Part shown: one piece after another, positions 12,107-50,516 of the stretch
Layout: every line of letters starts with the position of its first letter
How positions within the stretch are numbered: the first letter of the stretch is position 1
From: Trichoplax adhaerens
Lineage: Eukaryota > Animalia > Placozoa
Direction: 5' to 3'
DNA: 64,000 nt
Assembly: GCF_000150275.1 (NCBI RefSeq)
Contig: NW_002060951.1
Span: forward strand, 1,250,297 to 1,314,296
Notes under the pieces: generated by a model
Databases searched by the model: none
Seen by the model: the letters and a program-made list of their open reading frames with translations, nothing else
What the model was told of the DNA's origin: nothing
Program-made: the position numbers and the translations under genes

Positions 12107-12405
12107 CAGGAATTTACCGAATAGTCAAGCAGATCAATTCGTATATTCCCTTTGTATTTTTCAATTAATTAGAAGAAGACGTTGAAGACAAGGCTTTCTG
12201 CCTTGCAGGAATTTACAGAATATTCAAGCAGATCAATTTGTATATTCCCTTTGTATTTTTCAATTAATTAGAAGAAGACGTTGAAGACAAGGCTTTCTGC
12301 CTTGCAGAAATTTACAGAATATTCAAGCAGATCAATTTGTATATTCCCTTTGTATTTTTCAATTAATTAGAAGAAGACGCTGAAGACAAGGCTTTCTGCC
12401 TTGCA
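12107..12405. repeat. Tandem repeat, 3 x 99 bp, near-identical
   Basis: Copies start at 12107, 12206 and 12305 (cagga/aatttac..tcaagcagatcaatt..gaagacaaggctttctgccttg). Confidence 0.95.
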
Positions 12406-14195: not shown

Positions 14196-17100
14196 ATGTA
14201 TGCTAAAGGCAAAGGCAATAATTCTACTACTACGCCTCCGGATAGTCAAGCACGTGAAAAGTAAGTGGAAATCAATGATACCAACTTGAGCATTAGTGTT
14301 CACTTCAACATGGAAATTTGTAAAATGATGAATACTTTTGCAGTAGCAGATTACCGGATTTATTATTGATGACATGTTATGCAATGTCGAATATTCCTGC
14401 ATAGTGTTGTATCAGTCAATAGCTGTTGTCGACTATGACACCGTACAAAACTTCAACCTTCTCCTGCTCCTACTTGAACCGTCTACATTGAGATCTGCAT
14501 GTTTTGCTCATAGGCTGATCGTTGACGATGCTTTTTCTTTCTCTTCCCTTTTTTCGGCCACAATAATATCATCATCATGTTATGGCATACTTGTGTGCAT
14601 AGTAGAAAAAGAATGCCATACCGCACCACTAATCGTTCATTACTGACCGATAATACCATTCAACGATATGGCATATCGACTGGTAGTTGAACAATTATAC
14701 ACTAGTGTCATAACAGATATTGCAAACCGCGAGACAATGTTCTTTTCTTATCTTTACGGTATATTACCGTGTTTTTGATTAGCTATAGTATTGCTCAGTA
14801 TGCTGTAATGAACGGAAGTACTAGGATAATTCGTTACCTACTCAAACTTTGCTATCCTTTCCATGGCTACTTCATTCGATGTCTCCACTAAAACTCGTCT
14901 ACGTACAGTAACTTTATTTTCGTTATGATGCTTGTGAAAAAAAAGACATTGAAATCGTCATAGACCAATGTAGTCTACTCTACCGTATACAGTAGTAGTA
15001 CCTACAGGAAGAGAATACGCGTAGATTAGGAATTATAATTATCCATGCGTATCTTTGCGTTACCCTTAATAGATAGATATTTGTTCAATTTTACATGATT
15101 AGTAATAGTATTCAAGTTTGGGCCGTAGTGTTTGTGTTGTTTGCTTCCGTAGATAGTTGAATGACGCAACTGATACTTTTTATCGCACAAGTAATGACAA
15201 CAGTGTAGAACTTGGAAATGCAGTCCACTCTGATCTGTTTATACTTCAGAGCCAAGCGATAGCAAAAGATGAGAAATATTGTACAGGATATTGTATTATG
15301 CTTCTGCAGATGTGGTTGAAATGAACTAGCGTCATTTTTCTTCAAGAGTCATTGTTGGCTATTGTAATTCAGTTGAAAACATGTACAATATAGCAAGTAT
15401 GTTTTAGTTTCTAATGAATTGTGATCTTTTCAGATTGGCCGGCTATGTATACGAGTATCTATTCCACACAGGAGCTAAGAAGGCTGCTCAATCCTTTCTC
15501 TCTGAGGTTAGTTATCAAAGAGGTGTACACTATTTGGATGTATTCATTTTGCATGATAACATCGGTGCAACACAATATGATAACGTTTTAAGTCGATGTA
15601 GTTAATTTGCTTTAATTAAACGTTGGGCACATGCGATTCAATTATTTTTATTATCGATTGAGACCTTTTGATACGATCAGTATCTGCCAGTGTAAGATCC
15701 ACTATCGTAAAGCGTAAAGTATTTATTAGTCGTGGACTGTGTGTATTCCTATTTTTTGCAACCAGCACTCATTTATTATTCTACAGTATTGATGATATTT
15801 GATAGACTTGTTTTTGCAATGCTAAACTATTCTTGCTTTTCTGTTGCGATAGATATCATAGAATGTTATCGCATTTTTCCCTGTTTCGCTTTGTGTTATT
15901 AAATTCATAGTACGATCAACAGTGGTACTGTACGTATCGGCCATACTAAGTACTGTACTGTACAGTAAAAAGTAACATTTTGCCCTTGGGTACTCATCTC
16001 TGCAGTACAATGGCAACAGTATCGGTAATCGCGTCAGCTCGAGTGTTGTTGTGGGTCCAGTAGTGGACAGCTCGTACAGTACGTCAATATTGTAGTACTA
16101 AACTGTAGAACTGTACTCCCGACGCCAGTCCGAAAATTGGACCTCAAACGATGGTACCGTACCGGACTCTATCCCATCATGCTGTACTGTCACTGCACTG
16201 GGAATCAGTGATGGAGGCATTTTTGGGGAAAAAGCAAGCTATTGGAGTAAATTCCCTTTTTTGGGGGGGGGATTGAACCCTTGAATTGGCCGAGAGATGG
16301 AGTAAGTGAGTCCATCTCCATGCGGATGTTAGTAACCGATTCGTCTCAATTGTACGCTCTAGTACCAGATCGACATCGGTAGCTTTGTGAAATGGATTAT
16401 CCACAGCCATCAACAAACGACGTGATGGTGTAATCATACTATCATTAGCGTTTGGCAATCAGTGATGGAGGCATTTTTGGGGGAAAAAGCGAGCTATTGG
16501 AGTAAATTCCCCTTTTTTTGGGGGGGGGGGGATTGAACCCTTGAATTGGCCGAGAGATGGAGTAAGCGAGTCCATCTCCATGCGGATGTTAGTAACCGAT
16601 TCGTCTCAATTGTACGCTCTAGTACCAGATCGACATCGGTAGCTTTGTGAAATGGATTATCCACAGCCATCAACAAACGACGTGATGGTGTAATCATACT
16701 ATCATTAGCGTTTCATGATTATAATAATAGTTATTGAATACAAGTTACAGTTGTAGACTAGCAAGGAGTGTTTACAATACAATACAGTACAGCACGGATG
16801 GGACATTTTCAACGTGCTACTACGGCGCACATTGCCCCTTTTACAAGCCTTTGGACTTTTTTCTTGTCTTGATTTAATCGATATTGCATATTGATAGAAC
16901 GCCAGTTCCTAAAAAATGACCGATTTAAAATGATAGTAGAGTTGTTATCCATTCAACCAGTATTCACTTCATAACAGCAATGATGATATAACATTAATCA
17001 ATTACTATTGATAGTACACACTCAATGGATGCATTAAATGTGACGTTTTGATTCAATTGGCAAAGAACTACAGTACTCAATACTGTCATTGCTTGCATTA

Positions 17101-27654: not shown

Positions 27655-30600
27655 ATGGGACGCTTCTTTCAAAAACTGAAGTTACTAGTATGGAAGAATT
27701 TTGCCTTGAGAAAGAGACAAATCGTAAGTCGTTCTATTTCAGTTTTAATGATAATCAATACTGCACGCTATACTTGTTGTCAAGTAAAAACTTCAAATCT
27801 CCAATCCGCGTATCATTTACAACGCAGTATTATCTATATTGTACATTGTGCTTCTGTTGATATCCTTATACTGTACTGTAGACCCATACTGTAATTTTAT
27901 CCGATTTAAAACTGCAAGTTACCCTTAAATGCTATCAAGGTTACTGTAGTGTTGTTTCCGATCGATGTAACCCACAATCCTTGATATATTTGAAGCTATA
28001 GCCAATGTTGAGTACTGTATATTTGTATCGCTGTCTCCAATGTTGTAATCACATATTGTACTGTACAAGTTCTGTCTGCTGAATATTCGTGCTGTTGATT
28101 GAGAAGAGAAATCGAAAGGCTATTGACCGTAATCTACATGTAACTTAATATAGTGCTGTCTATACACTTGATATAGACATTTTTCTTTTTCTGTTTGTTT
28201 TATTTCAGTGTGAAGGTAGAGAAACGAGTTACATCATATTTTGGGGACTTATTTTCCAGTTTTTCTTACTAAAGTCATACAATTGCTTTTTCACTACCGT
28301 GCTATCTTTGCGCCAATACACAATTTAGTGGTATTTTTTAGTGAAAAAAGCAACATAACGTTCGTTTACAATCATTTTTAACGTCGGTCTTATCTAGTTG
28401 TGCTAAAGAGTTTTGTTTTGCAGTCTGCGCCCAGTCATAATATTGATCACCCTAATTTTCGTAGCTAACTAGTAGAGACTTTATTTAGAGTAAGACTACA
28501 GAATTGGGCTATTAATCCTATAATTAATGACGTAGGTTAATACAATTTAGTGTGCACGAATACAGTCAAAATAAATCGTCATTGTCTCAGCATGATACAG
28601 TTCGATAGCCGCGTCGATAGGGAATGTAAAGTATAGCCAACATTGTAGAATGTAGTACACAAATAACCTGAGACAAGCCTCCTTCAGTGCTCTTTCAAGT
28701 TTTATTAACATACAGATCCTATACGAATGCACAGTAAAATATACTTCCAAAATCATCACGCTTTTAATAACTTGATAGAGCTATTTTCTCTGCTAGCAAT
28801 TTATACTCAATCTACAGTATATAAAAGATTACGTTATAATACGCTCGTAGAACGAGTAGGTCATCCCTGTTTTCCCCTTATACAATACAGTCATAAAAAT
28901 AGTACGGTATCATACATGTAAGCTATTTTGGGAGAGTGAGAGGGGGGGGGGGAAGTAATTAATCAATGACCTTTTCTACTAATTATTTTTTATTATATCA
29001 AGTAAAGTAATACAGTGATGTGAAAAATAAATCGCGTGGAATTTATCATTACGCTGCTCTTGCAATGGGTTTCCAAACTTTAAAACAATCTCTAAACGTA
29101 AAGTGACTCACTGTCAATTTAATGAAGATCGAACTATTGGTTTCAAATCAGAAGAATAATGTTCAAAAATAAAATTAATGTTCATAAACTGTAGTCAAAG
29201 ACCCTCAAATCGATAGGCTACATGAGCAGGCGAAAAGTCAGTGAAAAAAATGCCAATTTCTTTCCTACTGTAAGTCTGTAACTACATATACAGAATGTGT
29301 ATGGGATTCGATCGACCCCGGAAAAGCAGGTACAGTACGCAGCAGTCGCATGGTGCGGCATACAGTACTGTTCAGCTATGGGCGGAGTCTGCAATCCGCT
29401 AAGGCAATAATAGAAAAGAACCAGGAATGCCTTCTGTCAATACTGTACAGTGTACAGTACTAAAGAAGCTGGATACTGTACGTATAGTACTGTACAGTAC
29501 AGTACTGTATAATGCAATAAAAGATCCTACAGTACGCAATGTACACACTGACCAGCCCATGCACCCTTAAAATGTGCGGTGTCATTGTCATCGTTATGAC
29601 CCCACTGCCACACATAGGCACACACAATGATGATATACAGTACAGTAATGGATGCGCATCTATAATAGACAGTACCTATAAATGAAGCAATCGCATGCTA
29701 CAACTCAATAGAATCACCAATGACAAGCTAAAACTTTCAACGATCAGGCTGTTACTTTAAATATTGAAAAATCAACATTCCCAAAAAAATAATAATGAGA
29801 ATAATCATCAATCAGTTGATTTCAATCGATTGTCATCGAACAATAATAGGTATCTCTATTCTAGAATATAGGTTGCGACCAATATCCGAATACGTGTATA
29901 TCTTCCATCCTTGATTGCAATAGTCAGGGAGGGTATCAAGATTTAAATTGGTCATGATTAAACAACCAGATGAAGAATCTTTCAATAAACGAGTACAAGG
30001 GATAAAAATGATCAAGCGTAGATTAACCGATTGATAGTTCATTAATCAATGCGTACAGTATACAGTAAGCGACAGAAATGAAAGGCTGAAAATAATTTTC
30101 AATTGTACTAACGAATGATGATTGCTACTACTGTACTATTATATTAATTGTAATTGCAAAGCGTGTGTGGATCATAGCGTTTTTCCCATCTCTATGGTGT
30201 GGACAGCAATGATTTCCTGACATCATCGGGCCAATGAGAGAAGTACTCAGTATTTGACAGGGCGTAGTCACCGAGAAATAAAACTAAACTTCATATCATG
30301 CACAACACATTACTGTACTGTACTGTACAACCTTCAGTACTGCATGTATTGGATTTAATCAGCGTATCCAATATGATTCCATAATACTGTTCGAGCGTGA
30401 ATGGAAGCGCTCTCATAATGAAATAGCTAAAATGATAAATGCATTTGTAAATCACGCCTTGCAAGTGCATAATACAGTACACGTACTACGTACGCATTAG
30501 TCAGTTCACCCATTATCAAGCTGTAGGTTGTGTACAGCGATCATACAGTACTATTTCAATACTTCACTTTGAGCTTCAAGCATTGGTACAAAGCTACTCA

Positions 30601-33600
30601 TTTTTAAATAGTAGCAAAAATCCTCATGGATGCTCAAGTTTGCTTATATTAATCAATTCATCATTAATCGATCATCAGTTTATGGACTTAACCTTTCGCT
30701 TAATCGTGAAAATGAGATGAGTGTAACAAAATACTTTACTAATTTTAATCTGACCTCTAATTTCTTGTGTTTTCCTCTTCTTTACAATGTAGTTTCGTAA
30801 TGTCGTCGAAGTCATCTGTCCTTTGGTTCTTTTCATGATATTGGTTGCAGTCCGACAGCGAAGACCACCGGAGTATCGAAAAGCCTGTAAGAACTGACTC
30901 TATAACACTTGTAAAAGTTTCTTTCTTGATTAATTAATTATGTATTGGATTACATGAAAGAATGTTCTTGAAGTATAATGATGTTTACCACAAACAAAAA
31001 TTATACTGTAAATGGGATAAAGAATACGTAGTATTTATCCTAGTGCGTTCAAATTTTATTCCATAGACCTAGCATTAATGCATTAAAGCTATCCAATATG
31101 CAGTACAATGCACAGTATTGTCTATGGAGATTACACTCTCTTTACATCATAAATTTACACCTAGTTAATACACGGTCAATTACAACAAGAGTACGTCATC
31201 AAGTCAGATCAACCATACGAAAAAATTATAAATAACGTAGTTCTACTTATGGAGATTATTGTAACTACTCATTCATTTAAAATTATGTTAATATCCAAAT
31301 TACTTTTCAGCTTACTATAAACCACAAGCGTTACCTTCTGCTGGATTGCTGCCTTTCCTTCAAACTTTTGCCTGTGATTTTGGACAGGCAAAGTCTCACT
31401 ACCCTATTAATGGCATTCCGTTACGAAATGCTGCGTAAGTGCCATACTTTATTCAATAGAATAATAACTTTTTAGTATTCGCCGATGCTAGTAGATCAAT
31501 ACTCGTAATATTCATACAAAGTAAAGTTACCTTCAGTACACTACGATGCTTTATAGTGTTACCCATTCTTACCAATGGATAATTAAATATTCCTCGATAC
31601 TGCATGCAGGTACAGCATGTATATTTTTACATTTGTATGTATTCTATCATTTAATTCGTATCCAAAATCATACTTTATAGGGCTGACCGATTGTTCGCCG
31701 ACGTTGCGAAAACCTTTCAAAATTCGTCACTAAGCGACACTCTCACCCAACTACCTCAGGATTTAAACAACGCCCAATTGCTACAAAATCTACTGTTGAA
31801 TCCTCAAAATAGCCCAAGTCTACCCAATGTCGGTAAGCTGAAAGACTATACAGCACTACATATTTACCATAATTTAGTACTTTAAATACTTCACAAAGAC
31901 ATTGAGTAATATTATGCCGACTAGTAAGTTATCATACGGGTACATTTTCACCTTCGTTATGACGACCAAAACATAAGATTTTAAGCTAATACGCCTATTT
32001 TAGCAATATGTATCACTTGTTAAGCAACACACAGCATTCAAACTCAATTTTGCGTTTATTTATTTAGTATCCCCTGTATCAACAATTGTAAACAATGTCA
32101 CCGCAGTAAAAGATTTCTTGCAAACCAACCTCTCTTTAACTGAATCGCAAACCAACACTCTGCTATCTGCGCAAATTAATGTTACAAAGGTAATAAAATA
32201 TTGAAATCGAATGTAAGGGATAGATTATATCAAATTGATGTAATTACCAAACACATAAGGCGCTGTACCAAAGTACGTATTACTTATATTAGAATCAATA
32301 AAGTGATGATAAATATACGTCTTTAGATTTCTAGTCTTCTACTCATTAATGGAACTAATACCAATCCAAGTGCCTTGCAAGTACTTCTTGGATCCCTTCG
32401 ACCTAGCATCAACAATCTTGGCCAATTATTAGGACTTCTGCAAGGATTAAACAACGGCAATAATAACAATCCTCTTGGTGGTCTTGTGAACAATCCTACT
32501 ATTAATAGCGCCCTATTGGTATAATATACTTTTATTACGTAAAATTTGTTAAATTAACTGTAAACTATTCATCCGTAAAATTGTCCGCTACATTATTTAT
32601 CAATTGCTGACCCTGACATTTCATGCTGATTTAGAATCAAGTCTTTTCTTCGGCGCAAATTAGAAATTTTTCATGCAATCCTACGTTATTTTTTGACGTA
32701 TTAATCTTTACAAATAGACCGGAAGGAGTAAGTCTTTGGTCCTCAACAATGAATTAAGCCAGTTCTAGCATGAGGAAATCTTACTGTACTGCTTTATTTT
32801 ATCTTGAAGGAAAATGTTAGAAAAGCTCTATGCAATCTGGATAATGCTCAAATGGGATATTTCGTTAATGAATTGAGACATCAAGTCAATTTCACAGCAT
32901 TAATAACTGTAGGTGCCCTTACCATCTTTTATTATCCACGTCTTACCTAGGATATAATTCTTTTAATACTTTAATTAATTGACCAGATTGCCAGTCCCAT
33001 CTCGGCTGTTCTCAGTGATCGTTTTCTTAAAATTCAAGCTGAACTAACAAGATTATTATCAGCGGTAAGCTGTTATTAATACCATTATGAATGGTAGTTA
33101 AGCGAAAGTCGCAATCTTTGTCATGTACATGTATAAATTGCCCAAACTAATTTTTTCATATTCTATTCGTTAGATGGGACAACTGGAAAGCCTGCAAAAC
33201 CTATTGCGAAGCTCTGGCCTATCTGTTAGTGGTAGAAATAATAGCCAAACTGCTGCCTCAATTGCAACCTTCTTATGTGGCGCGGGGAGTTCGAAGTTAT
33301 TTGGCAATTCCGTTATTAATACTTTTAATGGGGGTCGATCTAGCACCACGAGGATTGACGAAGGCAGCAGTACAACTGATAAGCCTAGCAACGAAACTAT
33401 AAATTACAACCAAAGTAAGGTTTACCTACATCTTTCTTTATGCAAAATAATCTTATTTACATAACGACTGATTGTATATCATAAGTATTTAGAAAGATCC
33501 TCACATGCTATAAACGTATTTAATTTTAAATTTTAGAGTGTTATAATGGAACTGGAATAAATTATCGTGGTACCGTAAATATTACGCGATCAGGGCTCCA

Positions 33601-36600
33601 ATGCCAATCGTGGACAGCTCAATTTCCTCATCAACACCGAAATACACCTGCAATTAGGCCAGGCAGAGGCCTAGGCGATCATAATTATTGTCGAAATCCT
33701 GATAACGAGCCTGATGGCCCATGGTGCTATACAACGAAGAATAAAACTCGATGGGAATACTGCACTGTTCCTCACTGTGGTAAGTTAGTTATTCTGAATG
33801 GAAAGTAACTTAGAGGATACTATTTTTTATCCTCATTCTATAACATTTAATTACAACGGTTGAAAAGATTTGTTCGCACTAGATTGTATTAGGAACATAC
33901 TGTGCTTTCCTAAAATTTCAATTAATCTTTCTTTCTCTGCGAAATATTTTTATTAAAATGCGTTCTAGATAAATGCGTAAATAACCTCAGAGTGTTAACT
34001 AGCAGACTGCCAGCATATTTTACAAATCTGCTTCTAAAAGGAAAGATCTTATTTTCACCTAATAACACAGCGGCTAGAAAAATTATTAAAAAGGTAATAA
34101 CAATCCCTGATTAAGTACAAACGATGACTTCTTCGATACTTCATGCAACATTTACCGTAACTTGTTTCATTTACATGTGTACAGGCTAACGAAACGTTCG
34201 TAGAAATTCAGAATTTGATGGTAAATGTTCGTCGTTTGCTTAATGCAACTTCACGATTAGAAAAATTTTTACAGCAAAACCCGCAGCAATTGCAAAATCT
34301 AATGGTATGTAAGAGATTCTAACGAATTTGTACGTGTAAACTCGTCTTCCAAAAAAACAGATTACTCATAGTGAAGTTATTGTCTTATAAAACGTAATTT
34401 TTCTTTCAAAACTTTTAGAATACTGTGCAAAATCCGGCCGTGCGACCGTTCTTAAACGCTTTTGGTGTAAATGTCAGCTTTTTCGATCCGAAAAACAATA
34501 ACAGCATTATGTCATTGCTGCATAACATCAATTATTATGGCTACACTGTTTTAGATGTGGCAGAATGTGTAGATTTAAATTTCTTTGAAGGATACGACAC
34601 CGAATATGATCTAGAAGTACGAGCCATGAATACTACCGCAAATAAAGAAAGTCCTATTCTCGGAAGTAAGTAATCTAATGATGGCTAATCCTTCTTTTAC
34701 TTGTTAGTATCATATGATTAATGACGAGTTTTATATCTACTATTAGGCATTGTATTTATGAACCTGAACAACGGCTATATACCACGGCATGTCAAGTATA
34801 AACTTCGGCAAGATGTTGACTTCACACCGGACACGTACAATGTGCGACGAGGGTAAGCTTACTCTATCATCCTTATTTTACTATTCAGTAATTGTATCCC
34901 TAAAAATATAATTACGATAGATCGTAGAATAATAATCATAAATCTACTTATAGATTCTGGTTACCGGGTCCAACGGGAAATCAACAATACTATCAAGGTC
35001 TATTTGTTGTCTTACAAGACGCAATTGAAAGGGCTATTATGGAAAATATCATTAATGTATCTGCTGATGCACCTGGTGTTTATCTACAACAGTTTCCTTA
35101 CCCATGCTATATTCGGGACTTGTAAGTTAAACCTTTCATCACTAGAATTTTTGAACTCTTATAGTTAATATTTGATAATATGTATGCGTATTTATTGACA
35201 GATTTGCAAGTGCAATCGGAGGTATTCTTCCACTTTTTATGACTTTATCTTGGATATACACAGCAGCGATGATTGTGAAAGCTGTAGTTCATGAAAAGGA
35301 ACTCCGCCTTAAAGAAGTAACCTATTCTATGGCTTTAATTGCAATTTTTTAGTCTACAAATGCTTATTGCGGGACTTTTTATTATTTCAATTGTATAGGT
35401 GATGAAAATGATGGGTCTTGATAATGGTGTCCATTGGGCAGCTTGGTTTATTCAATGTTTCATTATCATGCTTCTTACAGTGTTTTTCTTAACTCTAATC
35501 CTTCGTGTAAGTCTATATTCGGTTGAAAAATAGATATATAACCTACAGATGATGATACGAAGGGAATATGCTCTTTAATTCCGGTTTTAAACATTTTCTT
35601 ACAGTTTGGAAGAATATTTATGCACAGCAACCCAGTAATAATCTTTCTATTCTTCATGGTTTTTTCGTTGTCGACAATAATGCTATGGTAATTAGTTGAT
35701 GTGCATTTCAGTTATTAATGCTTCAAATTTTTTTTAAGTCATGAAATATCTGATTGATTTGTTTTTCGTTTAGTTTCCTTATGAGTGTCTTTTTTACACG
35801 AGCGAATGTCGCTGCTGCTTGTGGTGGGATTATCTTTTTCCTATCCTACTTTCCTTCCATTCTCGTTATTTTGTATGAATCAGTTATGACCTCTGGACAA
35901 AAAGGGATCGCATGTTTGTCGTCAACGACTGCTTTTGCATTAGGTTGTAATTATATTGCACAATATGAGCAGCAAGGTGTCGGTATCCAGTGGTCTAACG
36001 TTCGATCAAGTCCTGTAAGTAAAGACAATTTTAACTGACCCGATTAATGATCTGTTCAATACATTAATACGAAATGTAATTCAACTTTCATAGGTTACCG
36101 AAGATACATTTAGTTTCTCTGCTACCTGTGGAATGATGATAATTGACACTATCATATATGCAATTTTGACGTGGTATTTAGAAAACGTTTTTCCAGGTAA
36201 CGGTCGCATTGATGGTCATAAAATTTTAGCAGTATAAGTATTTTTCTCAACGCCTTGCTTCAATTATTAAAAGGTCAATATGGTGTTCCAAGAAGGTGGT
36301 ACTTTCCTTTTCAATCTTCATATTGGTTTTCTAAGCCTAAAACTGACGGTCATATCGTTACAACACGCAACCGTACGAATAGCCCATCTGCGGACGCTGG
36401 TGCCACTGAAAATTCGTCTTCATCTGACTCTAATGCTTTTAGTAAGCTTCTATCGTAATTTAAGGTATTACTTTCAAAGACTAAGCTTACTGTACTTAAT
36501 TATTAGACCCCCCACCTCTCGTTGAAGAAGAACCAACGCATTTAAAATTGGGTGTTTCAATCCAGAATTTAGTGAAGGTAAATGATACCATGATAGTTAT

Positions 36601-39600
36601 AATAATTTAGGAGCGTTAATTTTATATGAAATAAATATGGTTTAGATTTACAAGACCGGTAATAAACTTGCTGTGGACGAGTTAAATTTAAACTTATACG
36701 AAGATCAAATAACCAGTTTCCTTGGTCATAATGGTGCAGGAAAGACGACAACAATGTAAGTTTTATAATAACTATGCACCAAATTTCTCTACAAATAATG
36801 TAGTAAAATCTTGACAATACTCCTTATATGTTAAAGGTCGATACTCACTGGTCTCTTTCCTCCAACATCTGGAACGGCGCATATATACGGAAAGAACATC
36901 ACTGAAGATATGGATTCTATTCGTGAAAGCCTTGGATTATGCCCTCAACATAACGTATTATTTGAGAAGTAATTATACGATAATGAATCAGTAGTGTTAT
37001 GTAACAAAGCATAGCATAGAGTATAAATGTCAATCAGTTTCCATTAAAATTTTGCACTTGTTGATTTATTTATCAGCTTGACTGTTGAAGAACATTTATG
37101 GTTTTACGCACGCCTTAAAGGCCTATCTAGCGCAGAGGTTAACGATGAAGTTAATCGGTAATTGAAATGGAGCTATCGTGTTGTAATATACTTAATTTTG
37201 CAAAGATAGTATTGACTTTTAAATTCGTTTATCAGGATGATCGACGATATTGGCTTAAGGAATAAACGGCATGATCTGTCGTCTAGCCTATCTGGTGGCA
37301 TGAAGAGGAAACTATCGGTCGGTATTGCATTTATCGGTGGCTCGAAGACTGTAATTCTTGATGAACCTACTGCTGGAGTCGATCCTTATGCTCGCCGTGG
37401 AATTTGGGATCTTGTGCTAAAATATCGTAAAGGTAGAGAATATTGCTATTATTACCTTAGCTTATTCCAGATGTGTTACCTATCGACTTATATATTTAAT
37501 AGGAAAGACCATTCTTTTATCGACGCATTTTATGGACGAAGCTGATCTTTTAGGAGATCGGATTGCGATCATTTCTCGTGGGAAATTGCGTTGTTGTGGT
37601 TCATCTTTATTTTTGAAAACTAAGCTTGGAAGTGGTTATTACTTAACACTGGTGAAAGATACCGGTAGGTTTAATCATGTAAATAATTGAAAGATTTTCA
37701 TCTATTAGTACCCGCACTAATAATATAATTATATGATTACTATTATTAAAAATTTTTATAAGATTCGCAACGATCCGCTAAAGAAACTTGCCTCGGTGTG
37801 GATAACGTTGATGCTGCTACCGTTGATACTCCCGCCGTTGATGTCAACCAAGTGTCAAGATTTATTAGTGGATACATCCCGGAAGCTAAACTCGCAGAAA
37901 GTTATGGAAGTGAAATTACATATATTCTACCGCAGGAAAGCGCTAGAAGTGGCGTTTTTCACAACTTTTTTAGTAGCTTAGACCGGCATTTAAAAACTCT
38001 AAGGATTAATAGTTATGGCCTGTCTGATACCACTTTAGAAGAGGTAATATTATCAAAAATTGAAGTTTAAAAAATCGTAGCAAAATGACTTTAACATATC
38101 TATTATTTTATATATACGTATATCTCTTAGATTTTTCTTAAAGTTGCCGATGAAACTGGTGTTGATCAAGCTGGTAAGTTAATCGACACTGCTGAATTAT
38201 AGGAGGTAGATTAAATTTTACTTATATGATCTTTCTTTGCTGTCTAACTCTTTAATTGAATAAAAGATGGAAGAATTCCTCGTAGAAGATCGTCAAGGAA
38301 AATGCTATTCTGGAAGCGAAAAAGGCCGGCAAATTCTGCCCAAAACTCTGCTACGAATTCCCAGGATACCAGTCAAGGTTCGCATCTATGAAGAAATATA
38401 TGCAATTACATGTAACAAAATAAAATTACAATTTATTTTTATAAATTTCAGAATCTGGAAAAGATGTCACAGATTCAGTTGATGCTGGTGTTGATCCAGC
38501 CTCCAAAATTACCAAATTAACTGGATGGCGTCTAAAATTACATCACTTTCAAGCATTATTTAGAAAACGTTATCAGTATGCAAGGCGAAACAAGAAGGGC
38601 TTTGTATCTGCAGTTATTGTTCCTGTAATATTTATTTGTATTGCAATGCTCTTCGCCATGGCTAGCATAGATGAAAGCAGTAAGATTTATAGGATAAGCA
38701 TTACGCATTCGATGCATTCATATAGCTAATTGTGTTATCTTACAATTTCATTTATTGTATTATTGCAGTTACGTACAGCCGAAAATTAACCCCAGAAATG
38801 TTCACGCAGCCTTTGTATACGTTTTCTTCTCTGATGAAAAATCCTATTGCTGATTCTAGAAAAGCCTTAAATTCATTGTTCTCTAGCGGAATTGGGGATA
38901 CATGCATGGGATCAAACCATAACTGCACTAAGCCATATAAAGGTTGGAAACAGCTTGAGTTAAAAATTTTACTATTTATTATTTTAGAGATGCTAATCTG
39001 AGATACAAATAAAAATTCCAGAAGTAACCTCCACTCGAATTTATTATTTAGACACTTCAATATCCCTGTATTTTCCACAATCCAAAAATTCCTCCGTACG
39101 TCCATGCAGCTGCAGAACTGGCAGCATAGTCTGCCCTACTAATGCTGAAGGAAAATCGCCTCCTCGTTACGTGTTATACCAGCAAAACTATATGATAAAT
39201 CTAACGGACAAAAATGTATCTGATTATTTGATGAAAGTTAGGAATCGTTTTGTGCTGAAAATTTACGGTGGCTTTAGTTTTGGTGAAATCGATCCGAATT
39301 CTCCAAATATCGCAACCCCTTCTAGTGGTAGTATTCTTTTAAGAAGATTATCAGTGAGAAATGTTGTACGGGCGTGGTATAATAACAAAGGATATCATGC
39401 AATGCCTACATATTTAAACGCGATGAATAATGCAATTTTAAGGTCTAAATTAAGGCCTCAAGATGGAGACTCACGTAAATATGGTATTACTGCATATAAT
39501 CATCCCATGAATTTAACGCGTGCTCAATTAGTTAAGGAAGCGATAAGACGAAGCTACCGTGACTTACTTATTGCAGTATCAGTGATATTTGCATTGTCGT

Positions 39601-42460
39601 TCATTCCAGCTAGTTTTGTACTCTTCCTGATTAATGAGAGATCGTCTAAAGCCAAGCATTTGCAATTCGTTAGCGGCGTCCATCCCGTTATGTACTGGTT
39701 ATCAAACTACGCTTGGGATATGGTTAACTACTTATTTTCGATGGTCTGCATTCTAATTATATTTTTGGCTTTCAATGATAAGGCATTTACTAGTAGCGAG
39801 AATTTCCCGGCCTTGTTAATGCTATTGTTTCTCTATGGCTGGTCAATTATACCAATGATGTATCCGTCATCCTACGTCTTTAGTGTTCCGAGTACAGCTT
39901 ACGTGGCATTAGTCTGTATTAATATCTTTATTGGCATAAATGGTACCATTGCAACATTCATTTTAGAACTATTTGAGAATGACGCAGACTTAAAAACAAT
40001 AAATAATATTATAAAGCAAGTCTTTCTTATTTTCCCGAATTATTGCATGGGACGTGGAATTATGGATCTGGCGAAAAACCAATTAATGGCTGATGTCTTT
40101 AGTCGCTTTGGAGAAAATAATTTCAAAAATCCGTTCGGATGGGAATTAGTTGGACGTAACTTGTTCGCCATGGCAATCGAAGGAGTTGCATTCTTTATCC
40201 TCGTTTTATTGATGGAATATCGTTTCTTTATCAAGCAAAGGTACAAGAGCTTTTATCAATTTAGAACCTTTAAATGACTTTGATGCTGAGTTAAATTTGA
40301 GTACACTCGTATATTATGCCTGTTAGGGTATTAATGTATTGATTTACCGTTAAGAAATTCATTAAATGGAATTTAAAAATTTAACTGCTCACTCTATGAT
40401 AGGAAATTAACGCCGCCAAATCGTTTTGATGAAGTTGAAGATGAAGATGTTGCTGAGGAAAGAAGAAGGGTTCTCTCCGCTGAAGCAAACGATGGAATTT
40501 TGAGATTAGAAAATTTGACAAAGGTATAGTAAAGAAGTTGTACCGATAATAACTTGTACGGTATTTGTAAACACCGGTTGGTAACTTTCAAAATTGTATT
40601 CGTATTGGCTATAGGTCTATCGAACTCGTAGGAAGAAGCTTATAGCAGTGGATCGTCTATGTGTGTCAATTCCACAAGGCCAAGTAAGGGAACGTAACTG
40701 GTTTACGTTGCATTAACACAATATTTCAAGTAAATTAAGAGTCGTTATCATATGCTACAAATAATTGTATTTGTTGTAGTGCTTCGGCTTATTGGGTATT
40801 AATGGAGCTGGAAAGACCACCACTTTTAAAATGTTAACAGGCGATATTGATGTAACGAAAGGTGATGCATTCGTTGATGGTCACAGGTAAGCTTTACTGA
40901 TGGTATATATACAACTTATTTAGTACCTGATTAGCTAGTGAGCGATGCCCTATTCACAATAGATTGTACCTAAGTTCTCTTGTAGATCGTATCATCGTAT
41001 CAATGTAGCACGTTACTTGAATCTACGAGTATTCACGTTACTATATTAAAATTTGATTAATTCTGAACTATTCTGATGCTTCAAATTACAGTATATTAAG
41101 CGAAACTGACAGTGTGCGACAGCGAATTGGATACTGTCCTCAGTTTGATGCAATTTTAGATTTATTAACTGGCAGGGAACATTTAATGTTCTTTGCTCGA
41201 TTACGTGGTATTCCCGAATCGGAAGTCGCAAAGGTAGCGTAAGCTATATGCTGCATCCATATATGCACTCTGTATGTACAGCAATCATTATTAAAACTAA
41301 TGTAATCGTATCAAATCAACTTTATAGATTGCAGATTGGGGTATAAAGAAGCTTGGATTAATACAGTACGGGGATCGATTAGCCGGCACCTATAGTGGTG
41401 GCAACAAACGTAAACTGTCTACAGCAATCTCTTTAGTAGGAAATCCACCCATCATCTTTTTGGTATGTACATTATACGTACAGTATTATACTTAATATGT
41501 AGCAATCTATGATAACTTTGTAGGCAATGATAATGTATTTCTCTACAAACTAAGGATGAGCCCACAACTGGTATGGATCCTAAAGCTCGTCGCTTTTTGT
41601 GGGATATGATAAATAATATTGTACGGGATGGTCGATCGGTAGTTCTTACATCACACAGTATGGAAGAGTGTGAAGCTCTTTGTACAAGAATTGCAATTAT
41701 GGTCAACGGAAAGTTTAAATGTATTGGAAGCATCCAACATCTGAAAAACAAGTAATAGCAAAAATGATCTTGCAAATGTTGTACCAAGTTTTATTAAAAA
41801 CTTTTGTTTATTTTACAGATTTGGTAGTGGTTACACCGTTCAAATTCGAGTTAAGGGTTCGCAAGCTAATCTCGAACCATTAGCATCCTATGTTTCGAAA
41901 ACGTTCTCTAATGTAGTTCTTGTGGTAAGCTATGGATGTGTAGAGCGCGCACAGTCAGTATAATAAGCGATTATTATTTCGTAACTTGTCGTATTTTCTA
42001 CAGGAACGGCACCACAACCAACTTCAGTATCACTTCCCGGAAAATATAGAATTAGCGAAGCTGTTTGATAAGTTGGATAATGTTAGAGAAAAACTGGAAA
42101 TAGATGACTACTCAGTTTCTCAGACCACTCTTGATGAGGTTAGGGTGTTTTAATAATAATATTATTTCTGTAACTCCATTCCGTTGAACTGTTCTGTTTT
42201 AATTCATCATTCAGATCTTTATCGGCTTCGCGAAGCAACAGCGCGACGACTCTGATGACATTATTACTCCAGATTCAATTGCACAAGATCGAGAATTGAC
42301 GCAAGCTAACAACAATAGACATAGTCTGATTGATGTAAGAGAGCCAATTCCGACATTAAGACCTAAAGAAAATGGCCACCAACTTGGGGAAACAAAGGTT
42401 ACAACATACCATCGTCATTCAGATGGTATCCAACTTCTACCAACTGAAACGCCTGTATAG
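27655..42460 (+). CDS. ABCA: Full-length ABC transporter subfamily A (ABCA1/2/4/7-like lipid exporter) with a kringle insertion in ECD1
   Basis: N-terminus [22 protein letters not shown]; [12 protein letters not shown]; [10 protein letters not shown]; [17 protein letters not shown]; [17 protein letters not shown]1: [33 protein letters not shown]2/TMD2: [29 protein letters not shown]2: [55 protein letters not shown]-terminus ..PTETPV, stop at 42458-42460. Exact vertebrate orthologue cannot be assigned. Confidence 0.96.
33537..33779 (+). CDS. Kringle-domain exon within the ABCA gene (243 nt, phase 1-1)
   Basis: Bounded by ttttag| and |gtaagt. Translates (K)[80 protein letters not shown]: six Cys plus the YRG, CQxW, NYCRNPD, PWCYT and WEYC kringle signatures. 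In frame with the upstream exon (ends 33414) and the downstream exon (starts 33969). Confidence 0.93.
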
Positions 42461-45400: not shown

Positions 45401-45692
45401 CTAATCAATCCCAACTGCTGTGAAAGACACTGTATTACAAAATCATAAAAATCAGTGTTTATTGCCATCAATTTAATTAATTAAACTGATTATCAATATT
45501 TTTAACGGTTCTATATAGAACAATTCTAGTTTATTTCAAGTTAAGCGGTTGTCGTTTATTATATTATTATTGTCTTTCCGCTTCTGAGCGCACAGTATTT
45601 TAATCGTATCGTATATCCCAGCATTGTATAAGCTTTGGAAGCTTTCATAGTGAGAAGAGCATTCTTGTAGTCATTCTAATTCACAAATAGCA

Positions 45693-48600
45693 ATGTCTGA
45701 GGAAGAATCAATTTTGAACATTGTGGGATTTGAATTGATAGTCGAAGGCCTAGCCGGTGTTGGATGTGGCGTTGCCAGCATTCTTGTACCCATTTTCTCC
45801 AGCGCTTTTCGATTTCAATATTATCAAGGAATTTGGGCAGGAGGCCTGGTAAGTTTCGTCACTATATTAGCGATTAGTTAAATTCTTACTGTCCTTTCAC
45901 CGATTAATTTGGCTTGCCAAGGCAATACTGATCTATCTTATCACGATATCAGTGATACCGTGATTTATTAAGGAAATTTTTATCAGATTTTAAAATAAGA
46001 TAAATCTTTAATTAAATTGAGTAAGATAATCTCAAAGCTCTAATAATCGCTCTAATTTATAAAACATCTTTTTCCTTTATCCTATTATGAAAATGATAGA
46101 TTTATGCATACATAAAAAACAATTTTCATAGGACTTCAGAAATGATCCATATCAGCTTTCTTAACGAATGAATAGTATCGTGCTATATTTCAACTAGGGC
46201 TATAGCTTTTAATCGTAGACTGCATCGTCTCATTTATTCTATAACCGTAAGACACATATATTGAAGTTGCTGTCCGCTACTTTAAAGTTTTTCAACAAAA
46301 TAAATGGCTAAATTGAAATCTATCCCTTAATAAATGATATATTAACAAGCTTCTTTACTATACTCAATAAAATAAGAAGTAATCATGCTGCATCACTATT
46401 GCTTTTATCTAATACAGTGTTATTCTTTTTTACTCAGTTTATTAACATGATTTATATTTTATGATCGCCAATTAAAAACTTGTTATCTATCCTTTTGCTT
46501 TTGTCCTTTCTTAACTTTATCGTATAAATATTGCCCCTCGTAACTATGATTTTCGTACTCTATCGCCCAGAATATGATTCATTTTATCCATGGCTATAAG
46601 TGGTATAATATGATTCCTTATTTAGTAAATCTACACCACTTTGATCCGAATATCTCAAATTACCGACTATAGGCAAAGCTAAAGTAAATTTTAATCCTTA
46701 AAGTCATACTCTGAGAGTATTAGTCATATTCTACCATTATAGTAAAAATGTTGATTAAAAAAGTAAGTAAAAATGGCGAAAAAAAACCAACAAAGGATCA
46801 ACCTGTTGCAACAAATTCTATCAATCAGCTGCCCAGCAATGGCCGTATCCATAAGCAACGACTAGCATTATTTAGAATCGCATAACCTAGTAGCTACATC
46901 ATCTTAATTCTATCGACCTTTTAATGCAGTTTATCTGATCTAAAATTGAATATTAAGGTACTTTTGTACTCTTCAAGTAATTTAATTCTAATAAGGAATC
47001 CGTAATGCTGCCCCCTTCCGATCTTTATTTTCTTCTGTATGACACAATCTCTATGCTAGAATTTCTAATAATATTCTTTTCGTTTAATCAAGTTATTTTT
47101 TCAATTAGCTTTCGCATTCCTTTTAAGTTTACTACATATTCATGTTGACAAATTATTGAATTTATCGTTATAGAATTCATTTTTAGTCTCTCGTTTTAAT
47201 CTTGAATAACATCTGATATTACATCTGGCAACACTTCTATAGTCAATTTTTTCTTCCGTTATAGCAATCTTTCATTTTTATTTTGATGTGTAATAGGATT
47301 GATTAACTCATTTAATCTTAATAATTCCTTTTCTATAGATTATTCTCGTTGGTATTTATGCTCTAATACTCTACTATAAAGATGAATTTGAAAAGTTATG
47401 GCTGGTAAGTCAATACCACTTCAAAATAACTGATTATAGAATATATTTACATTCATCTTTGACGAGTAATAAAATATAGTAATACCGTACGACAGATACT
47501 GATTTAATCTGACTTGAGTTTTTTCCTATCTAAATACAAAAGTACCAGTTTGCATCTATACTTTTTAATATTTTTGTGTAAATGTGTCCATTTCATGCAG
47601 AATACAGGGTATAAGATACAAAATCAGTAAAAATCATTAAACACATAGTGACTATCGCTTAACACTTGTTAGAATATGCTGTTATGATTGATTAATTAAA
47701 GTATAATGGCGTTAAGTGTTCATACTGTTACAATTACTGCGGTAATCCCTAGTATATAGTTGAAGCTAAAAGTCTGACAATTCCCAGGCTCCTATACACA
47801 ACAATTAAAATATTCCTGAATTATTAAACATAATTTTAAAGAGTTTTGAAATCCAAGATTTGTACGATAAGTTTAAACTCGTAGACTCGTGCGTCATATG
47901 CACCTTACTTATTTTGAAATTTAAAGCCCAAATAAAAATTGGAGAGCGAATTCATGTAACAGGGCGAGAATCTTCTGATATTTTATAGTTCCATATTGGT
48001 TAAAATCTCTAATTGATCATTTAGCCAATTCTAGTATAGATCTTAAACCTTTTCCGATAGTAAACATATTTTTGCTGATTTAGATCGACTTATCATTCGA
48101 TTAGCTGACCTCATATCTGACAACTGCAACTTACTTCATAGAAATGTAACACAACAATATCGTAGGCAATTTTAGTACCGCAGTACACATATCGCTATTC
48201 TTGAGAAAAAAAAGTGTAACTATATAAAGTGCATTGTATTGTTCAAAATACACAAATATATACGCGTATATAGCTAAGCTTGAGATTGACTAATATTGTA
48301 TATTAATTTCATCACTGGCTCAGTTTTGATAATGGTATAGTAAAATTTAAGGCTAACCCTAGGCAGCTGAATGGTAATTCTTCTAAGCGGTAGTTTATAG
48401 CCCTAATTACCAAATTATAGTATTAATAGAGTGGATAGGTTTAACTATTTTTGTGTTAAGCTTATATCATGTTATAACGGCATTCAGTAACTATACGATT
48501 TGGATGCATAGAAGTAGGCGTAACCATAGCAACCATTCATCAAAATGTTAATGGTACCTATGACTGTATTCTATCTGGTCCAGTAGAATATTGCAGTTTA

Positions 48601-50516
48601 TATGGATTATACTAAAATTGCTGGCAGCATTTTATTTAATAACTGCGATATTGCTGCTGCACAAATTATACCCTACTAAACCTACTGTATAAGAATCTTA
48701 TATAGTACACTTTGATAATATTTACGCTTATAGTAATCTAAGATATTACATTGGTGTAAGGTATTTGCAATTTAGCTAAGTACTTAGCTAAGAGTAGTAA
48801 CTATAGTTTTGATAAGTGCTCGTTTATTCGAAATTGTTATATGAAACAAATGAATTCTACACTTTTAAATAAAATCTTAGAGCTATAATACAGTAAATGA
48901 TGATAAATGATGCATAAATAATGTCTCTATTGTANNNNNNNNNNNNNNNNNNNNNNNNNNNNNNNNNNNNNNNNNNNNNNNNNNATATTATGATATTAAA
49001 ATAATACTTGGCGCTAAGAATGATTTAATCTTTAGGATTTATAAATAATTATATAATTATTAATCCTAATAATCTAATAAGATGTCAGTACAGTATACAC
49101 TTTCATAAATATACTAAAGCTTAGTAATAGTCTTGCTAAAATCGCTTTATATTGCTGTCAAATATGAATATTATAACATTAATGCATATGCTTGACTAAA
49201 GACTATATACTGACTTTACTTCAATTTACTTTTGTAGTTTATAATCTTTATCGTCCTTGCCAGCATTTCTGCTTTTGCTGTTGCTGGCGCATGTGGTCTA
49301 AGTGCATACACTGCTTATCTATTTTGGCCCCAAGTGTTGCTTAGTAGGCCAGCACCATTCGCTATCAATACTGGAATAGCCCTAGTCTTCTTAATCAGTT
49401 GTATCGCTTGCATAAGAGCTGCTATTGCTGCAAGTCAGTTAAGAAAAGCTTATGTAAGTATTCACATAGACTAAGATATTGTCATTATTATTTCTAATAC
49501 TACTTAAGTAAGGCATCATAAGCAGTTAGCGGTGATAATCGAAGTACTATAGGAATGTAGTAGTGTTGGAAGCTATAAAAAGCCGCCAATCTTTTCTAGT
49601 AATTTTATATTATATGTGATTACTATGACGTAGAAATAAATACATATTTAGCTATGAAGTAAATTAGCTTGTATGCTACTTATTTTATTGTAATTAAAAT
49701 AATACCGGCGTAAATTGTTTCAATCACGGTAATAAACTTTTAAGTTATTATTCCGATACTGTAATCTATTAGAAATTTTAATTTTACTCTAAATTTATTT
49801 CATATACCTCACATTACAGCTAACAGTCAGACTTCAGATTGTAAAACATAACTCACGATTGTCATCACACACGATTATATGTCTAATTATCTTCATTGCA
49901 TATATATATATATAGGTTATACAAATCGCTCAGAGTGACAAGCAGCACAAAATTAATGAAAAAAATGACTTAATCTTCTTAGCCCAATGGGAAAAAGAAA
50001 AGAAACAAGGTATCAATAATAATCCCCAAGATCAACCAGCAGAGATCATTCGAGGTAAGATTGAATATATACGCGTATGCTTAAAAAAACGAAGTACTTA
50101 AATCTTCCATGGTAATAATTTAACTAACGGAATGGTATAATATACGGATATATAGTCCATCCGGCCAAAAAAGGAACAAAACCGACTCAAGTAGCGCCAG
50201 CTGAACCTCGACAAGAAAGAATTAAATTGCAAGTGGATATTGGAAACGTAGAAAAAGACCTAGAGGTTAGTAATATTATCATTCGTTAATATCTCAGTTT
50301 TGCAATTATGATGTGAATTACCACACGTAGATATTATTTATAATGTAGTATGGCATCAATTTATAGCATATAGTCTGTAGCAGCAAATCTTTGTTCGTTA
50401 GAGCGAATAAAATATGTAGTATTATAATGATAAGAACTTTGCTAATAAAATCCATCTGAATATTTTGAAAATAGGGCGAAATCGAAGTTACTCCAGAGGT
50501 GGTGAAAGCTGATTAA
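45693..50516 (+). CDS. Small four-transmembrane protein (~240 aa), MS4A/CD20-like, with a charged C-terminal tail
   Basis: Six exons with compatible phases: 45693-45848, 47339-47404, 49238-49453, 49916-50054, 50156-50265, 50475-50516. Four hydrophobic segments; TM2 begins GIWAGGL|IILVG, like the W-x-G motif of CD20-like proteins. Ends GEIEVTPEVVKAD, TAA. Family assignment is tentative. Confidence 0.7.
48935..48984. other. Assembly gap (50 N) in intron 2 of the 4-TM gene
   Basis: Run of n characters. Confidence 1.

What the first reader, a model, noticed from the sequence alone, without database searches (positions are those of the whole stretch)
33537..33779. Kringle domain exon-shuffled into the extracellular domain of an ABCA lipid exporter
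Seen: a 243-nt exon with canonical splice sites encodes a complete kringle (6 Cys, NYCRNPD, PWCYT, RWEYC) and joins in frame ..NETINYNQ-K-[kringle]-[16 protein letters not shown]. Known: the flanks correspond to ABCA ECD1; FLCG upstream and KC..GKILF downstream match the ABCA1 IVCG..TPYC..GKILYTP segment, so the insert sits in the variable loop between them. Kringles are typical phase 1-1 shuffled modules of plasminogen, apo(a), HGF, ROR and Kremen. I know of no characterised ABCA carrying one. Inference: the transporter has its own ligand-docking module, which might capture a lipid-acceptor protein in an animal that may lack apoA-I, or tether the exporter to matrix or secreted proteins. Three N-glycosylation sequons (NGT, NIT, NKT) fit an exoplasmic location.
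Basis: partly seen in the sequence, partly recalled or inferred. Interest (0 to 1): 0.92.

Follow-up and report, generated by a model that had tools for sequence, protein, structure and literature searches.

The report
Kringle exon inside placozoan ABCA1-like gene
A Trichoplax gene for an ABCA1-type lipid exporter carries, in the middle of its first extracellular domain, one extra in-frame exon encoding a complete, conserved, lysine-binding-type kringle, an architecture we found described nowhere, though no RNA evidence could be obtained here.

Summary
Window 33537-33779 (+) is a 243-nt phase 1-1 exon with strong splice sites that encodes a full kringle (Pfam E=3.5e-28; AF2 pLDDT 94.6; 0.6-0.8 A from apo(a) KIV and plasminogen kringles).

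It lies in a 40-exon, about 2255-aa ABCA1/4/7-type gene (27655-42460), between the first membrane helix and the block where TMD1 resumes, so it is in ECD1. A splice-aware model trained without these junctions picks the exon unprompted, and dropping it costs 10.6-18.4 bits.

A Logan contig from another organism, probably another placozoan, has the orthologous exon. It is 80% identical, and similarity stops at the exon borders. All 6 Cys, all 3 N-glycosylation sequons and the lysine-binding residues are kept. Of 28 kringles compared, only these two keep that full site.

Not shown:
- Transcript inclusion.
- ABCA context in the second organism.
- The ligand.

No kringle+ABC protein or paper was found, but those searches have limited reach.

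Verdict: a real exon and a new variant of a known kind. The docking function is inferred. The scan noted this same stretch once before (s1-801427), not on other DNA.

The parts
27655..27723 (+). Exon 1 of the ABCA1-like gene: the start codon and a cytosolic N-terminus beginning MGRFF, ending in phase 0.
   Evidence: The donor is ATC|GTAAGT.
30793..30886 (+). Exon 2, encoding the first membrane helix (model residues 23-41).
   Evidence: Hydropathy peak of 2.25; exon model.
31311..33064 (+). Seven exons of the N-terminal half of ECD1: 31311-31434, 31681-31832, 32068-32189, 32327-32518, 32635-32727, 32810-32908 and 32987-33064.
   Evidence: Splice-aware model. No hydrophobic segment in this stretch.
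33174..33414 (+). ECD1 exon immediately upstream of the kringle. It ends with a Ser/Thr/Gly/Asn-rich linker (...NETINYNQ) and its donor is in phase 1.
   Evidence: Donor score at the 95.7th percentile of GT sites in the region.
33415..33536 (+). 122-nt phase-1 intron, 25% GC.
33537..33779 (+). Kringle exon: 243 nt, phase 1-1. The kringle itself is 33539-33778, model residues 423-502.
   Evidence: Pfam E=3.5e-28. AF2 pLDDT 94.6. Fold matches at 0.6-0.8 A. Acceptor at the 98.8th and donor at the 99.6th percentile. Orthologue P0151 is 80% identical.
33780..33968 (+). 189-nt phase-1 intron, or 261 nt if the acceptor at 34041 is used. 28% GC.
33969..34093 (+). ECD1 exon immediately downstream (D-KCVNNL...GKILFSPNN). 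An alternative acceptor at 34041 keeps the same frame.
34185..35121 (+). Four exons of the C-terminal part of ECD1: 34185-34304, 34419-34665, 34747-34852 and 34954-35121. The last ends in ...PYPCYIRD.
   Evidence: Window 34955-35119 aligns with human ABCA1 residues 573-630 at E=2.6e-7, and with ABCA7 and ABCA4.
35202..36214 (+). Exons of the first membrane domain: 35202-35316, 35399-35506, 35605-35687, 35774-36014 and 36094-36214.
   Evidence: Read by eye from open frames and ag/gt borders. Hydrophobic segments at model residues 758-893.
36274..38942 (+). Exons of the first ATPase domain and the regulatory/linker region. Walker A GHNGAGKT, signature LSGG and Walker B VILDE are present.
   Evidence: ABC_tran E=2.3e-6. 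Motifs. Weak R1_ABCA1 match, E=3.7e-4.
39052..40240 (+). Large exon covering ECD2 and the second membrane domain.
   Evidence: Human ABCA1 E=3e-121. ABC2_membrane_3 E=9.5e-44.
40403..42460 (+). Exons of the second ATPase domain and the C-terminus, ending at the stop codon. Walker A GINGAGKT and Walker B IIFLDE are present.

Best explanation
The stretch is a genuine coding exon of a Trichoplax ABCA1-type lipid exporter. A phase 1-1 kringle module was inserted by exon shuffling into a phase-1 intron in the middle of the first extracellular domain. This happened before the split between two placozoan lineages.

In the protein, a flexible Ser/Thr/Gly-rich linker of about 45 residues precedes the kringle, so the kringle should project from ECD1 on the exoplasmic face. 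There it is glycosylated and disulfide-bonded.

It keeps a plasminogen/apo(a)-type lysine-binding pocket. It therefore most likely acts as a built-in docking site that holds a lysine-presenting extracellular protein next to the exporter's lipid exit.

Shown here: the domain, its fold, the reading frame, the splice signals, the topological position, the conservation and the retained pocket residues.

Inferred: inclusion in the mRNA, lysine binding, and the identity of the ligand.
For: - Domain: Pfam kringle E=3.5e-28, full length. AF2 pLDDT 94.6. The best structural matches are the lysine-binding kringles apo(a) KIV-10 and KIV-8 and plasminogen K4, at 0.6-0.8 A and TM 0.95.
- Host gene: ABCA1 E=3e-121, then ABCA4 and ABCA7. 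ABC2_membrane_3 and ABC_tran matches. Walker motifs in both ATPase domains. A single 40-exon, 2255-aa open frame.
- Position: first helix at model residues 23-41, next hydrophobic block from about 758, kringle at 423-502. The last ECD1 exon aligns with ABCA1 residues 573-630.
- Exon status: a splice-aware model trained without these junctions selects 33537-33779 at all three penalties tried, and dropping it costs 10.6-18.4 bits. The acceptor is at the 98.8th and the donor at the 99.6th percentile. The coding score is typical at 0.15 per codon, against a gene mean of 0.166. GC is 44% against 25-28% in the flanking introns. The flanking introns are 122 and 189 nt against a gene median of 98. Without the exon the intron would be 554-626 nt, longer than 38 of the 39 introns.
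- Conservation: P0151 is 80% identical and pairs with this kringle at 98/97 support. The branches are short, 0.11 and 0.23 against a median of 0.74. The nearest paralogue is only 57.5% identical. Similarity stops at the exon borders. The read-through residues fit a kept ag acceptor and a GTAAG donor.
- Kept features: all three sequons are kept although their middle residue changed.
- Binding pocket: D55, E57, W62, Y64, R71 and W72 are kept only in these two of the 28 kringles compared.
- Assembly: there is no gap within 15 kb.
Against: - No RNA evidence.
- The exon is symmetric, so skipping it also keeps the frame.
- Three word-indexed searches found no annotated or assembled protein that joins this kringle to ABCA sequence, in the length bands 51-161, 323-1029 and 1148-3652 aa. 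Public gene models may therefore omit the exon. These searches return few candidates, so this is weak evidence.
- One cationic pocket residue, R34, is Gly in P0151.
- No binding data exist.
Confidence: 0.68

Rival explanations
1. The kringle is an alternatively spliced cassette exon. The gene then makes both a plain ABCA1-like exporter and a kringle-bearing isoform, perhaps in different cell types.
For: The exon is symmetric (phase 1-1), so skipping keeps the frame. No long annotated protein with this kringle was retrieved. That would fit gene models built from the skipped form or from homology to kringle-less ABCA1.
Against: Both splice sites are among the strongest in the region, at the 98.8th and 99.6th percentiles. 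Cassette exons more often have weak sites (general knowledge). The strong conservation applies equally to a constitutive exon. No RNA data were available either way.
Confidence: 0.2
2. The kringle open frame is not part of any ABCA product. It is either a relic of a shuffled module decaying in an intron, or an exon of a separate nested transcript.
For: There is no transcript evidence, and no annotated fusion protein was found.
Against: A relic would not keep 6 Cys, 3 sequons, both splice sites and the binding pocket at 80% identity while the adjacent intron sequence shows no similarity. A nested gene lacks room: the flanking introns are 122 and 189 nt, and the exon has no Met and no signal peptide. 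The phase also matches the host intron.
Confidence: 0.08
3. The exon is an assembly artefact: a kringle exon from elsewhere wrongly placed inside the ABCA gene.
For: The genome holds at least 35 kringle exons.
Against: This kringle occurs once in the genome, and its nearest copy is 57.5% identical. The only run of N in the window is at 48935-48984. The exon fits the host intron in phase with normal intron sizes. No repeats flank it.
Confidence: 0.03

Closest known systems
Human ABCA1 (also ABCA4 and ABCA7): full ABC lipid exporters with two large extracellular domains (PDB 5xjy, 7tbw)
   Same: Same overall build: first helix, ECD1, membrane domain, ATPase domain, then a second helix, ECD2, membrane domain and ATPase domain. 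The length is about 2250 aa. The best sequence match is E=3e-121. The end of ECD1 is conserved (...PYPCY).
   Different: The matches to solved ABCA1, ABCA4 and ABCA7 chains cover only transporter regions. To my knowledge (from memory, not tested here) none of the characterised ABCA proteins has a kringle or any other shuffled module in ECD1. ABCA1 hands lipid to free apoA-I, and no apoA-I family match exists in this genome.
Lysine-binding kringles of plasminogen (K1, K4) and apolipoprotein(a) (KIV-7, KIV-8, KIV-10)
   Same: 46-55% identity, 0.6-0.8 A rmsd. The same three-disulfide pattern. The same pocket residues D55, D/E57, W62, Y/F64, R71 and W72. Apo(a) KIV-7 and KIV-8 dock on lysines of apoB-100 (PMC11111404, abstract seen).
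   Different: Those kringles sit in soluble multi-kringle proteins with a protease or pseudo-protease domain. Here a single kringle is embedded in a loop of a polytopic transporter. Position 57 is Glu rather than Asp. Binding has not been tested.
Membrane proteins with a single extracellular kringle: ROR1/ROR2 and Kremen
   Same: One kringle on the exoplasmic side of a membrane protein, serving protein-protein contact. The ROR kringles match at E about 1e-25.
   Different: Those are single-pass receptors with the kringle in a linear ectodomain, not an insert in a transporter loop.
The other kringle genes of Trichoplax, including the MAM-kringle-SRCR surface receptors (earlier notes s1-785609, s1-759544, s1-766215)
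   Same: Same genome and same kind of single-exon kringle module, with at least 35 copies.
   Different: They are at most 57.5% identical. None keeps the full lysine-binding set. Most have a different exon-border layout. None is linked to an ABC transporter.

Membership tests
Kringle domain (Pfam PF00051) | Profile match above the curated cut-off over the whole domain | tested here: met
   98.2 bits against a cut-off of 34.3, E=3.5e-28, profile positions 1-79 of 79.
Kringle domain (Pfam PF00051) | Six cysteines at positions 1, 22, 51, 63, 75 and 80, which form the three disulfides 1-80, 22-63 and 51-75 | tested here: met
   All six are present at those positions. They are invariant across the 28 aligned kringles. 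Disulfide formation itself was not tested.
Kringle domain (Pfam PF00051) | Kringle fold | tested here: met
   AF2 pLDDT 94.6. TM 0.95 and rmsd 0.6-0.8 A to 4bv5, 3kiv, 8v8z and 1pk4.
Lysine-binding kringles (plasminogen K1/K4, apo(a) KIV-10 type) | Anionic pair at 55/57, cationic residue at 71 (with or without 34/35), and the aromatic trough W62, Y/F64, W/Y72 | tested here: met
   D55, E57, R71, R34, W62, Y64 and W72 are present. P0151 keeps all but R34. None of the other 26 kringles aligned from this genome qualifies.
Lysine-binding kringles (plasminogen K1/K4, apo(a) KIV-10 type) | Measured binding of lysine or epsilon-aminocaproate | not testable with these tools
   Needs recombinant protein.
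ABCA subfamily full transporter, ABCA1/4/7 group | Two ABC-2-type membrane domains and two ATPase domains with Walker A, Walker B and signature motifs | tested here: met
   ABC2_membrane_3 E=9.5e-44 and ABC_tran E=2.3e-6. Walker A at model residues 1087 and 1972, Walker B at 1207 and 2070, LSGG at 1186. The first membrane domain is seen by hydropathy. The signature motif of the second ATPase domain was not found with my pattern, which may reflect an error in the model there.
ABCA subfamily full transporter, ABCA1/4/7 group | A large extracellular domain between the first and second membrane helices | tested here: met
   A loop of about 714 aa with 19 sequons and no hydrophobic segment. Its end aligns with ABCA1 residues 573-630.
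ABCA subfamily full transporter, ABCA1/4/7 group | Closest solved relatives are ABCA1, ABCA4 and ABCA7 rather than ABCA3 | tested here: met
   E values of 3e-121, 3e-108 and 1e-107, against 6e-43 for ABCA3.
ABCA subfamily full transporter, ABCA1/4/7 group | ABCA1-type R1 regulatory domain after the first ATPase domain | tested here: inconclusive
   PF23321 E=3.7e-4, 20.9 bits, below the cut-off of 27. This was a single-exon query.
ABCA subfamily full transporter, ABCA1/4/7 group | Lipid export activity | not testable with these tools
   Needs an assay.
Exon-shuffled class 1-1 module | The module is bounded by introns of the same phase (1-1) and sits in a phase-1 intron of the host gene | tested here: met
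   Phase 1 going in and phase 1 coming out. The exon is 243 nt, which is 81 codons.
Exon-shuffled class 1-1 module | An identifiable donor gene | tested here: inconclusive
   The tree does not resolve a sister among this genome's kringles. The nearest by identity is C1410:1400403-1400642, at 57.5%.
Expressed exon of the ABCA mRNA | Reads or cDNA spanning junctions 33414/33537 and 33779/33969 (or 34041) | not testable with these tools

The most novel reading that the evidence does not exclude
Placozoans solved acceptor capture for ABCA1-type lipid export differently from vertebrates. The exporter itself carries a lysine-binding kringle that docks a large lipid transfer protein (an apoB/vitellogenin-type particle) at its lipid exit, in the way apo(a) kringles dock on apoB lysines. 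The genome has three such LLTP loci and no apoA-I family match.
Probability: 0.15. Interest if true: 0.8.

Novelty: new variant of a known kind. Interest (0 to 1): 0.55.

Why it matters
How ABCA1-type exporters meet their extracellular lipid acceptor is still debated (my own knowledge, not tested here). A natural ABCA1-like protein with a dedicated, conserved protein-docking module in ECD1 would help in two ways. It would mark where on the extracellular domain an acceptor can be held. It would also give a handle for finding the acceptor in an early-branching animal that appears to lack apoA-I, by pull-down with the kringle and elution with epsilon-aminocaproate.

It is also a clean example of class 1-1 exon shuffling into a polytopic transporter. 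Such modules are mostly found in secreted and extracellular proteins (PMC8001218). Homology-guided gene prediction can skip a symmetric exon like this one without any frame penalty.

Tried and rejected

The genomic context of the orthologous exon therefore stays unknown.

3. The search of protein representatives with the kringle ranks by whole-protein score, so multi-kringle proteins filled all 150 places. None has ABCA parts. The search was uninformative for the fusion question.

4. To get round the length filter I queried with long kringle-bearing proteins restricted to their kringle: P0136 residues 914-993 and P0138 residues 259-338. These gave 133 and 53 candidates. No kringle+ABC protein and no placozoan protein appeared. 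This is weak negative evidence. The length bands 162-322 aa, 1030-1147 aa and above 3652 aa were not searched.

5. Single ECD1 exons against the PDB gave nothing. It agrees with my memory of the human sequence only.

6. The joined (spliced) protein model was built and analysed only inside scripts.

7. A first retraining of the splice model diverged into 115 tiny exons and was discarded.

8. The protein atlas returned only generic kringle clusters.

9. The supplements of the placozoan cell atlas (PMC10580291) are truncated as stored. They contain no 'kringle' and list only an ABCA5-like gene.

10. Papers: none holds Trichoplax, ABCA and kringle together. Papers with kringle and ABCA concern Lp(a) and ABCA1. 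The Patthy-group papers do not mention ABC transporters.

11. No repeat or target-site signature flanks the exon.

12. Complex prediction was not used, because no specific partner is claimed.


Full report
**Observation**

Window 33537-33779 on the + strand reads, in one frame only, an uninterrupted 80-residue kringle running from Cys1 to Cys80. The other two frames contain stops. Pfam's kringle model matches it end to end: E=3.5e-28, 98.2 bits against a cut-off of 34.3, profile positions 1-79 of 79.

The borders are ttttag|AG...TG|gtaagt. The upstream exon ends one base into a codon, and the downstream exon supplies the last two bases of a codon. The three sequons NGT, NIT and NKT are present.

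**Host gene**

The largest exon of the surrounding + strand gene (39.0-40.3 kb) matches human ABCA1 at E=3e-121, then ABCA4 and ABCA7, with ABCA3 far behind. Pfam finds ABC2_membrane_3 and ABC_tran in its exons and a weak ABCA1-type R1 domain.

I wrote a small splice-aware dynamic programme and trained it on unambiguous coding stretches of the window, none of them near the kringle.

I then derived splice-site weights from the gene's other introns, leaving the two kringle junctions out. With these weights the exon was chosen at all three intron penalties tried. The best model forbidden to use it scored 10.6-18.4 bits lower. Its acceptor and donor rank at the 98.8th and 99.6th percentiles of all AG and GT sites in the 16-kb region. 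An intermediate retraining run diverged and was discarded.

I added three membrane exons by eye and restored three exons dropped at the stricter penalty. The result is one open frame of 40 exons and 2255 aa, with Walker A and B motifs in both ATPase domains. The downstream acceptor is ambiguous between 33969 and 34041. The two sites score alike and share a frame, and the 72 nt between them have a slightly negative coding score. My memory of human ABCA1 favours 33969, but that is not a tool result.

**Position in the protein**

The first membrane helix is at model residues 23-41. The next hydrophobic block starts near residue 758. Between them lies a loop of about 714 aa with 19 N-glycosylation sequons, and the kringle occupies residues 423-502. 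The last exon of this loop aligns with ABCA1 residues 573-630, ending in the PYPCY motif that closes ECD1. The kringle is therefore inside ECD1, on the exoplasmic side.

A Ser/Thr/Gly/Asn-rich stretch of about 45 residues precedes the kringle, and the conserved part of ECD1 resumes directly after it. This suggests a tethered, projecting module.

Single ECD1 exons are too short and too divergent to hit the PDB on their own.

**Is it a real exon?**

No RNA evidence could be obtained. The case rests on four lines of indirect evidence.

- *Gene structure.* The splice sites are strong, the phase matches, and the coding score is typical at 0.15 per codon against a gene mean of 0.166 +/- 0.087. GC is 44% against 25-28% in the flanking introns. 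The flanking introns are 122 and 189 nt against a gene median of 98. If the exon were intronic, the intron would be 554-626 nt, longer than 38 of the gene's 39 introns.
- *No room for a nested gene.* The exon has no Met and no signal peptide, and the adjacent introns are tiny.
- *Assembly.* The only run of N is 15 kb away. This kringle is unique in the genome. No repeats flank it.
- *Conservation.* The word-indexed protein collection holds one relative, P0151, a 137-aa open frame called on Logan contigs. It is 80% identical across the kringle, against 57.5% for the closest of the at least 35 kringle exons in this genome. In a tree it pairs with the window's kringle at 98/97 support, on branches of 0.11 and 0.23 against a median of 0.74.

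Similarity between P0151 and the window starts three residues before Cys1 and ends two residues after Cys80. In both sequences these residues read ..VE/..LE|C and C|GK. That is what an ag|AG acceptor and a G|GTAAG donor give when translated straight through. Beyond those points there is no similarity.

All six Cys are kept. All three sequons are kept even though their middle residue changed (NIT to NRT, NKT to NLT). This is the signature of a translated, glycosylated exon under purifying selection in two lineages. The organism behind P0151 is not named. Given the level of divergence, another placozoan lineage is the simplest reading, but that is an inference. Its ABCA context could not be checked.

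**Function**

The domain's numbering coincides one-to-one with the classical kringle numbering. The alignment to plasminogen K1-K5 shows D55, E57 (Asp in plasminogen), W62, Y64, R71, W72 and a cationic R34.

I aligned 28 kringles: this one, 26 others from this genome, and P0151. Only the ABCA kringle and P0151 keep the full anionic, cationic and aromatic set. Most of the others have Gly, Ser or Asn at position 55.

An AF2 model (pLDDT 94.6) superposes best on the lysine-binding kringles: the apo(a) KIV-10/KIV-7 set, apo(a) KIV-8 and plasminogen K4, at 0.6-0.8 A.

The most likely mechanism is therefore docking of a lysine-presenting extracellular protein at the exporter. What that protein is remains open. 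The genome has no apoA-I-family match (a six-frame, exon-by-exon search, so a weak negative). It has three loci of large lipid transfer proteins. Apo(a) kringles KIV-7 and KIV-8 dock on lysines of apoB-100, itself an LLTP (PMC11111404, abstract). An LLTP acceptor is therefore an attractive candidate, but it is purely inferred.

**Novelty**

No paper in the library holds Trichoplax, ABCA and kringle together. Papers with kringle and ABCA concern Lp(a) and ABCA1. The Patthy-group papers on kringle shuffling do not mention ABC transporters.

Among the 131 matching long kringle proteins (1148-3652 aa, 133 candidates) and the 46 matching mid-sized ones (323-1029 aa, 53 candidates) that were retrieved, none has an ABC domain and none matches the window outside the kringle. 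The all-protein search was swamped by multi-kringle proteins, and the atlas gave only generic kringle clusters. These searches have limited reach, so the fusion may exist unnoticed in databases. An InterPro architecture query is needed.

If public placozoan gene models really lack the exon, there are two possible causes. One is that homology-guided prediction skips a symmetric exon without any frame penalty. The other is that the exon is not always included. I cannot tell which.

**Verdict**

This is a real, conserved kringle exon in ECD1 of an ABCA1-type exporter, and a new variant of a known kind. Confidence that it is a coding exon of this gene, whether constitutive or alternative, is high. 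Confidence in the docking mechanism is moderate, and the ligand is unknown. Interest is moderate (0.55), not 0.92.

Noticed in passing
window 51700-58200, - strand: An NPC1-type sterol transporter gene (NPC1_N E=4e-60, plus a sterol-sensing domain) lies tail-to-tail about 9 kb from the ABCA1-like gene. Two sterol/lipid traffickers are therefore neighbours.
   Followed up: partly
window 2800-10400, + strand: A SNF2/Brahma-type chromatin remodeller gene (Helicase_C E=2.5e-14, SnAC E=6e-20) lies upstream of the ABCA gene.
   Followed up: partly
G000:C1404:661358-664597 (L008): A kringle 54% identical to this one sits inside an uninterrupted open frame of 3548 aa. That is unusually long for this intron-rich genome.
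   Followed up: no
G000:C1410:1398983-1400642 (L005/L007): Three kringle exons lie in a row. The third is the closest paralogue of the ABCA kringle (57.5%). The first is the only other kringle exon with the same tight border layout, ag|NN TGY...TGY N|gt.
   Followed up: partly
G000:C1408:252438-254472, C1408:1049787-1053364 and C1411:5295193-5303406: Three loci with Vitellogenin_N (large lipid transfer protein) exons. No apoA-I family match was found anywhere in the genome.
   Followed up: no
G000:C1413:9712437-9713333, - strand: This is the only other ABCA-like locus found with the membrane-domain exon as query. It is much more divergent (32-53% identity), and no kringle hit lies on that contig.
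   Followed up: no
window 12107-12405, 13294-13609, 16199-16713 and 59416-59637: Tandem repeats of 99-260 nt units. In addition, many intergenic stretches (1-800, 12.4-14 kb, 26-27 kb, 59-62 kb) translate as runs of CTVQYSTV-like text, which points to a dispersed TACAGTAC-rich repeat.
   Followed up: no
window 45654-45878 and 49238-49471, + strand: Two hydrophobic open frames between the ABCA and NPC1 genes have no Pfam match. They may be exons of a small multi-pass membrane protein. The window's only assembly gap (48935-48984) lies between them.
   Followed up: no
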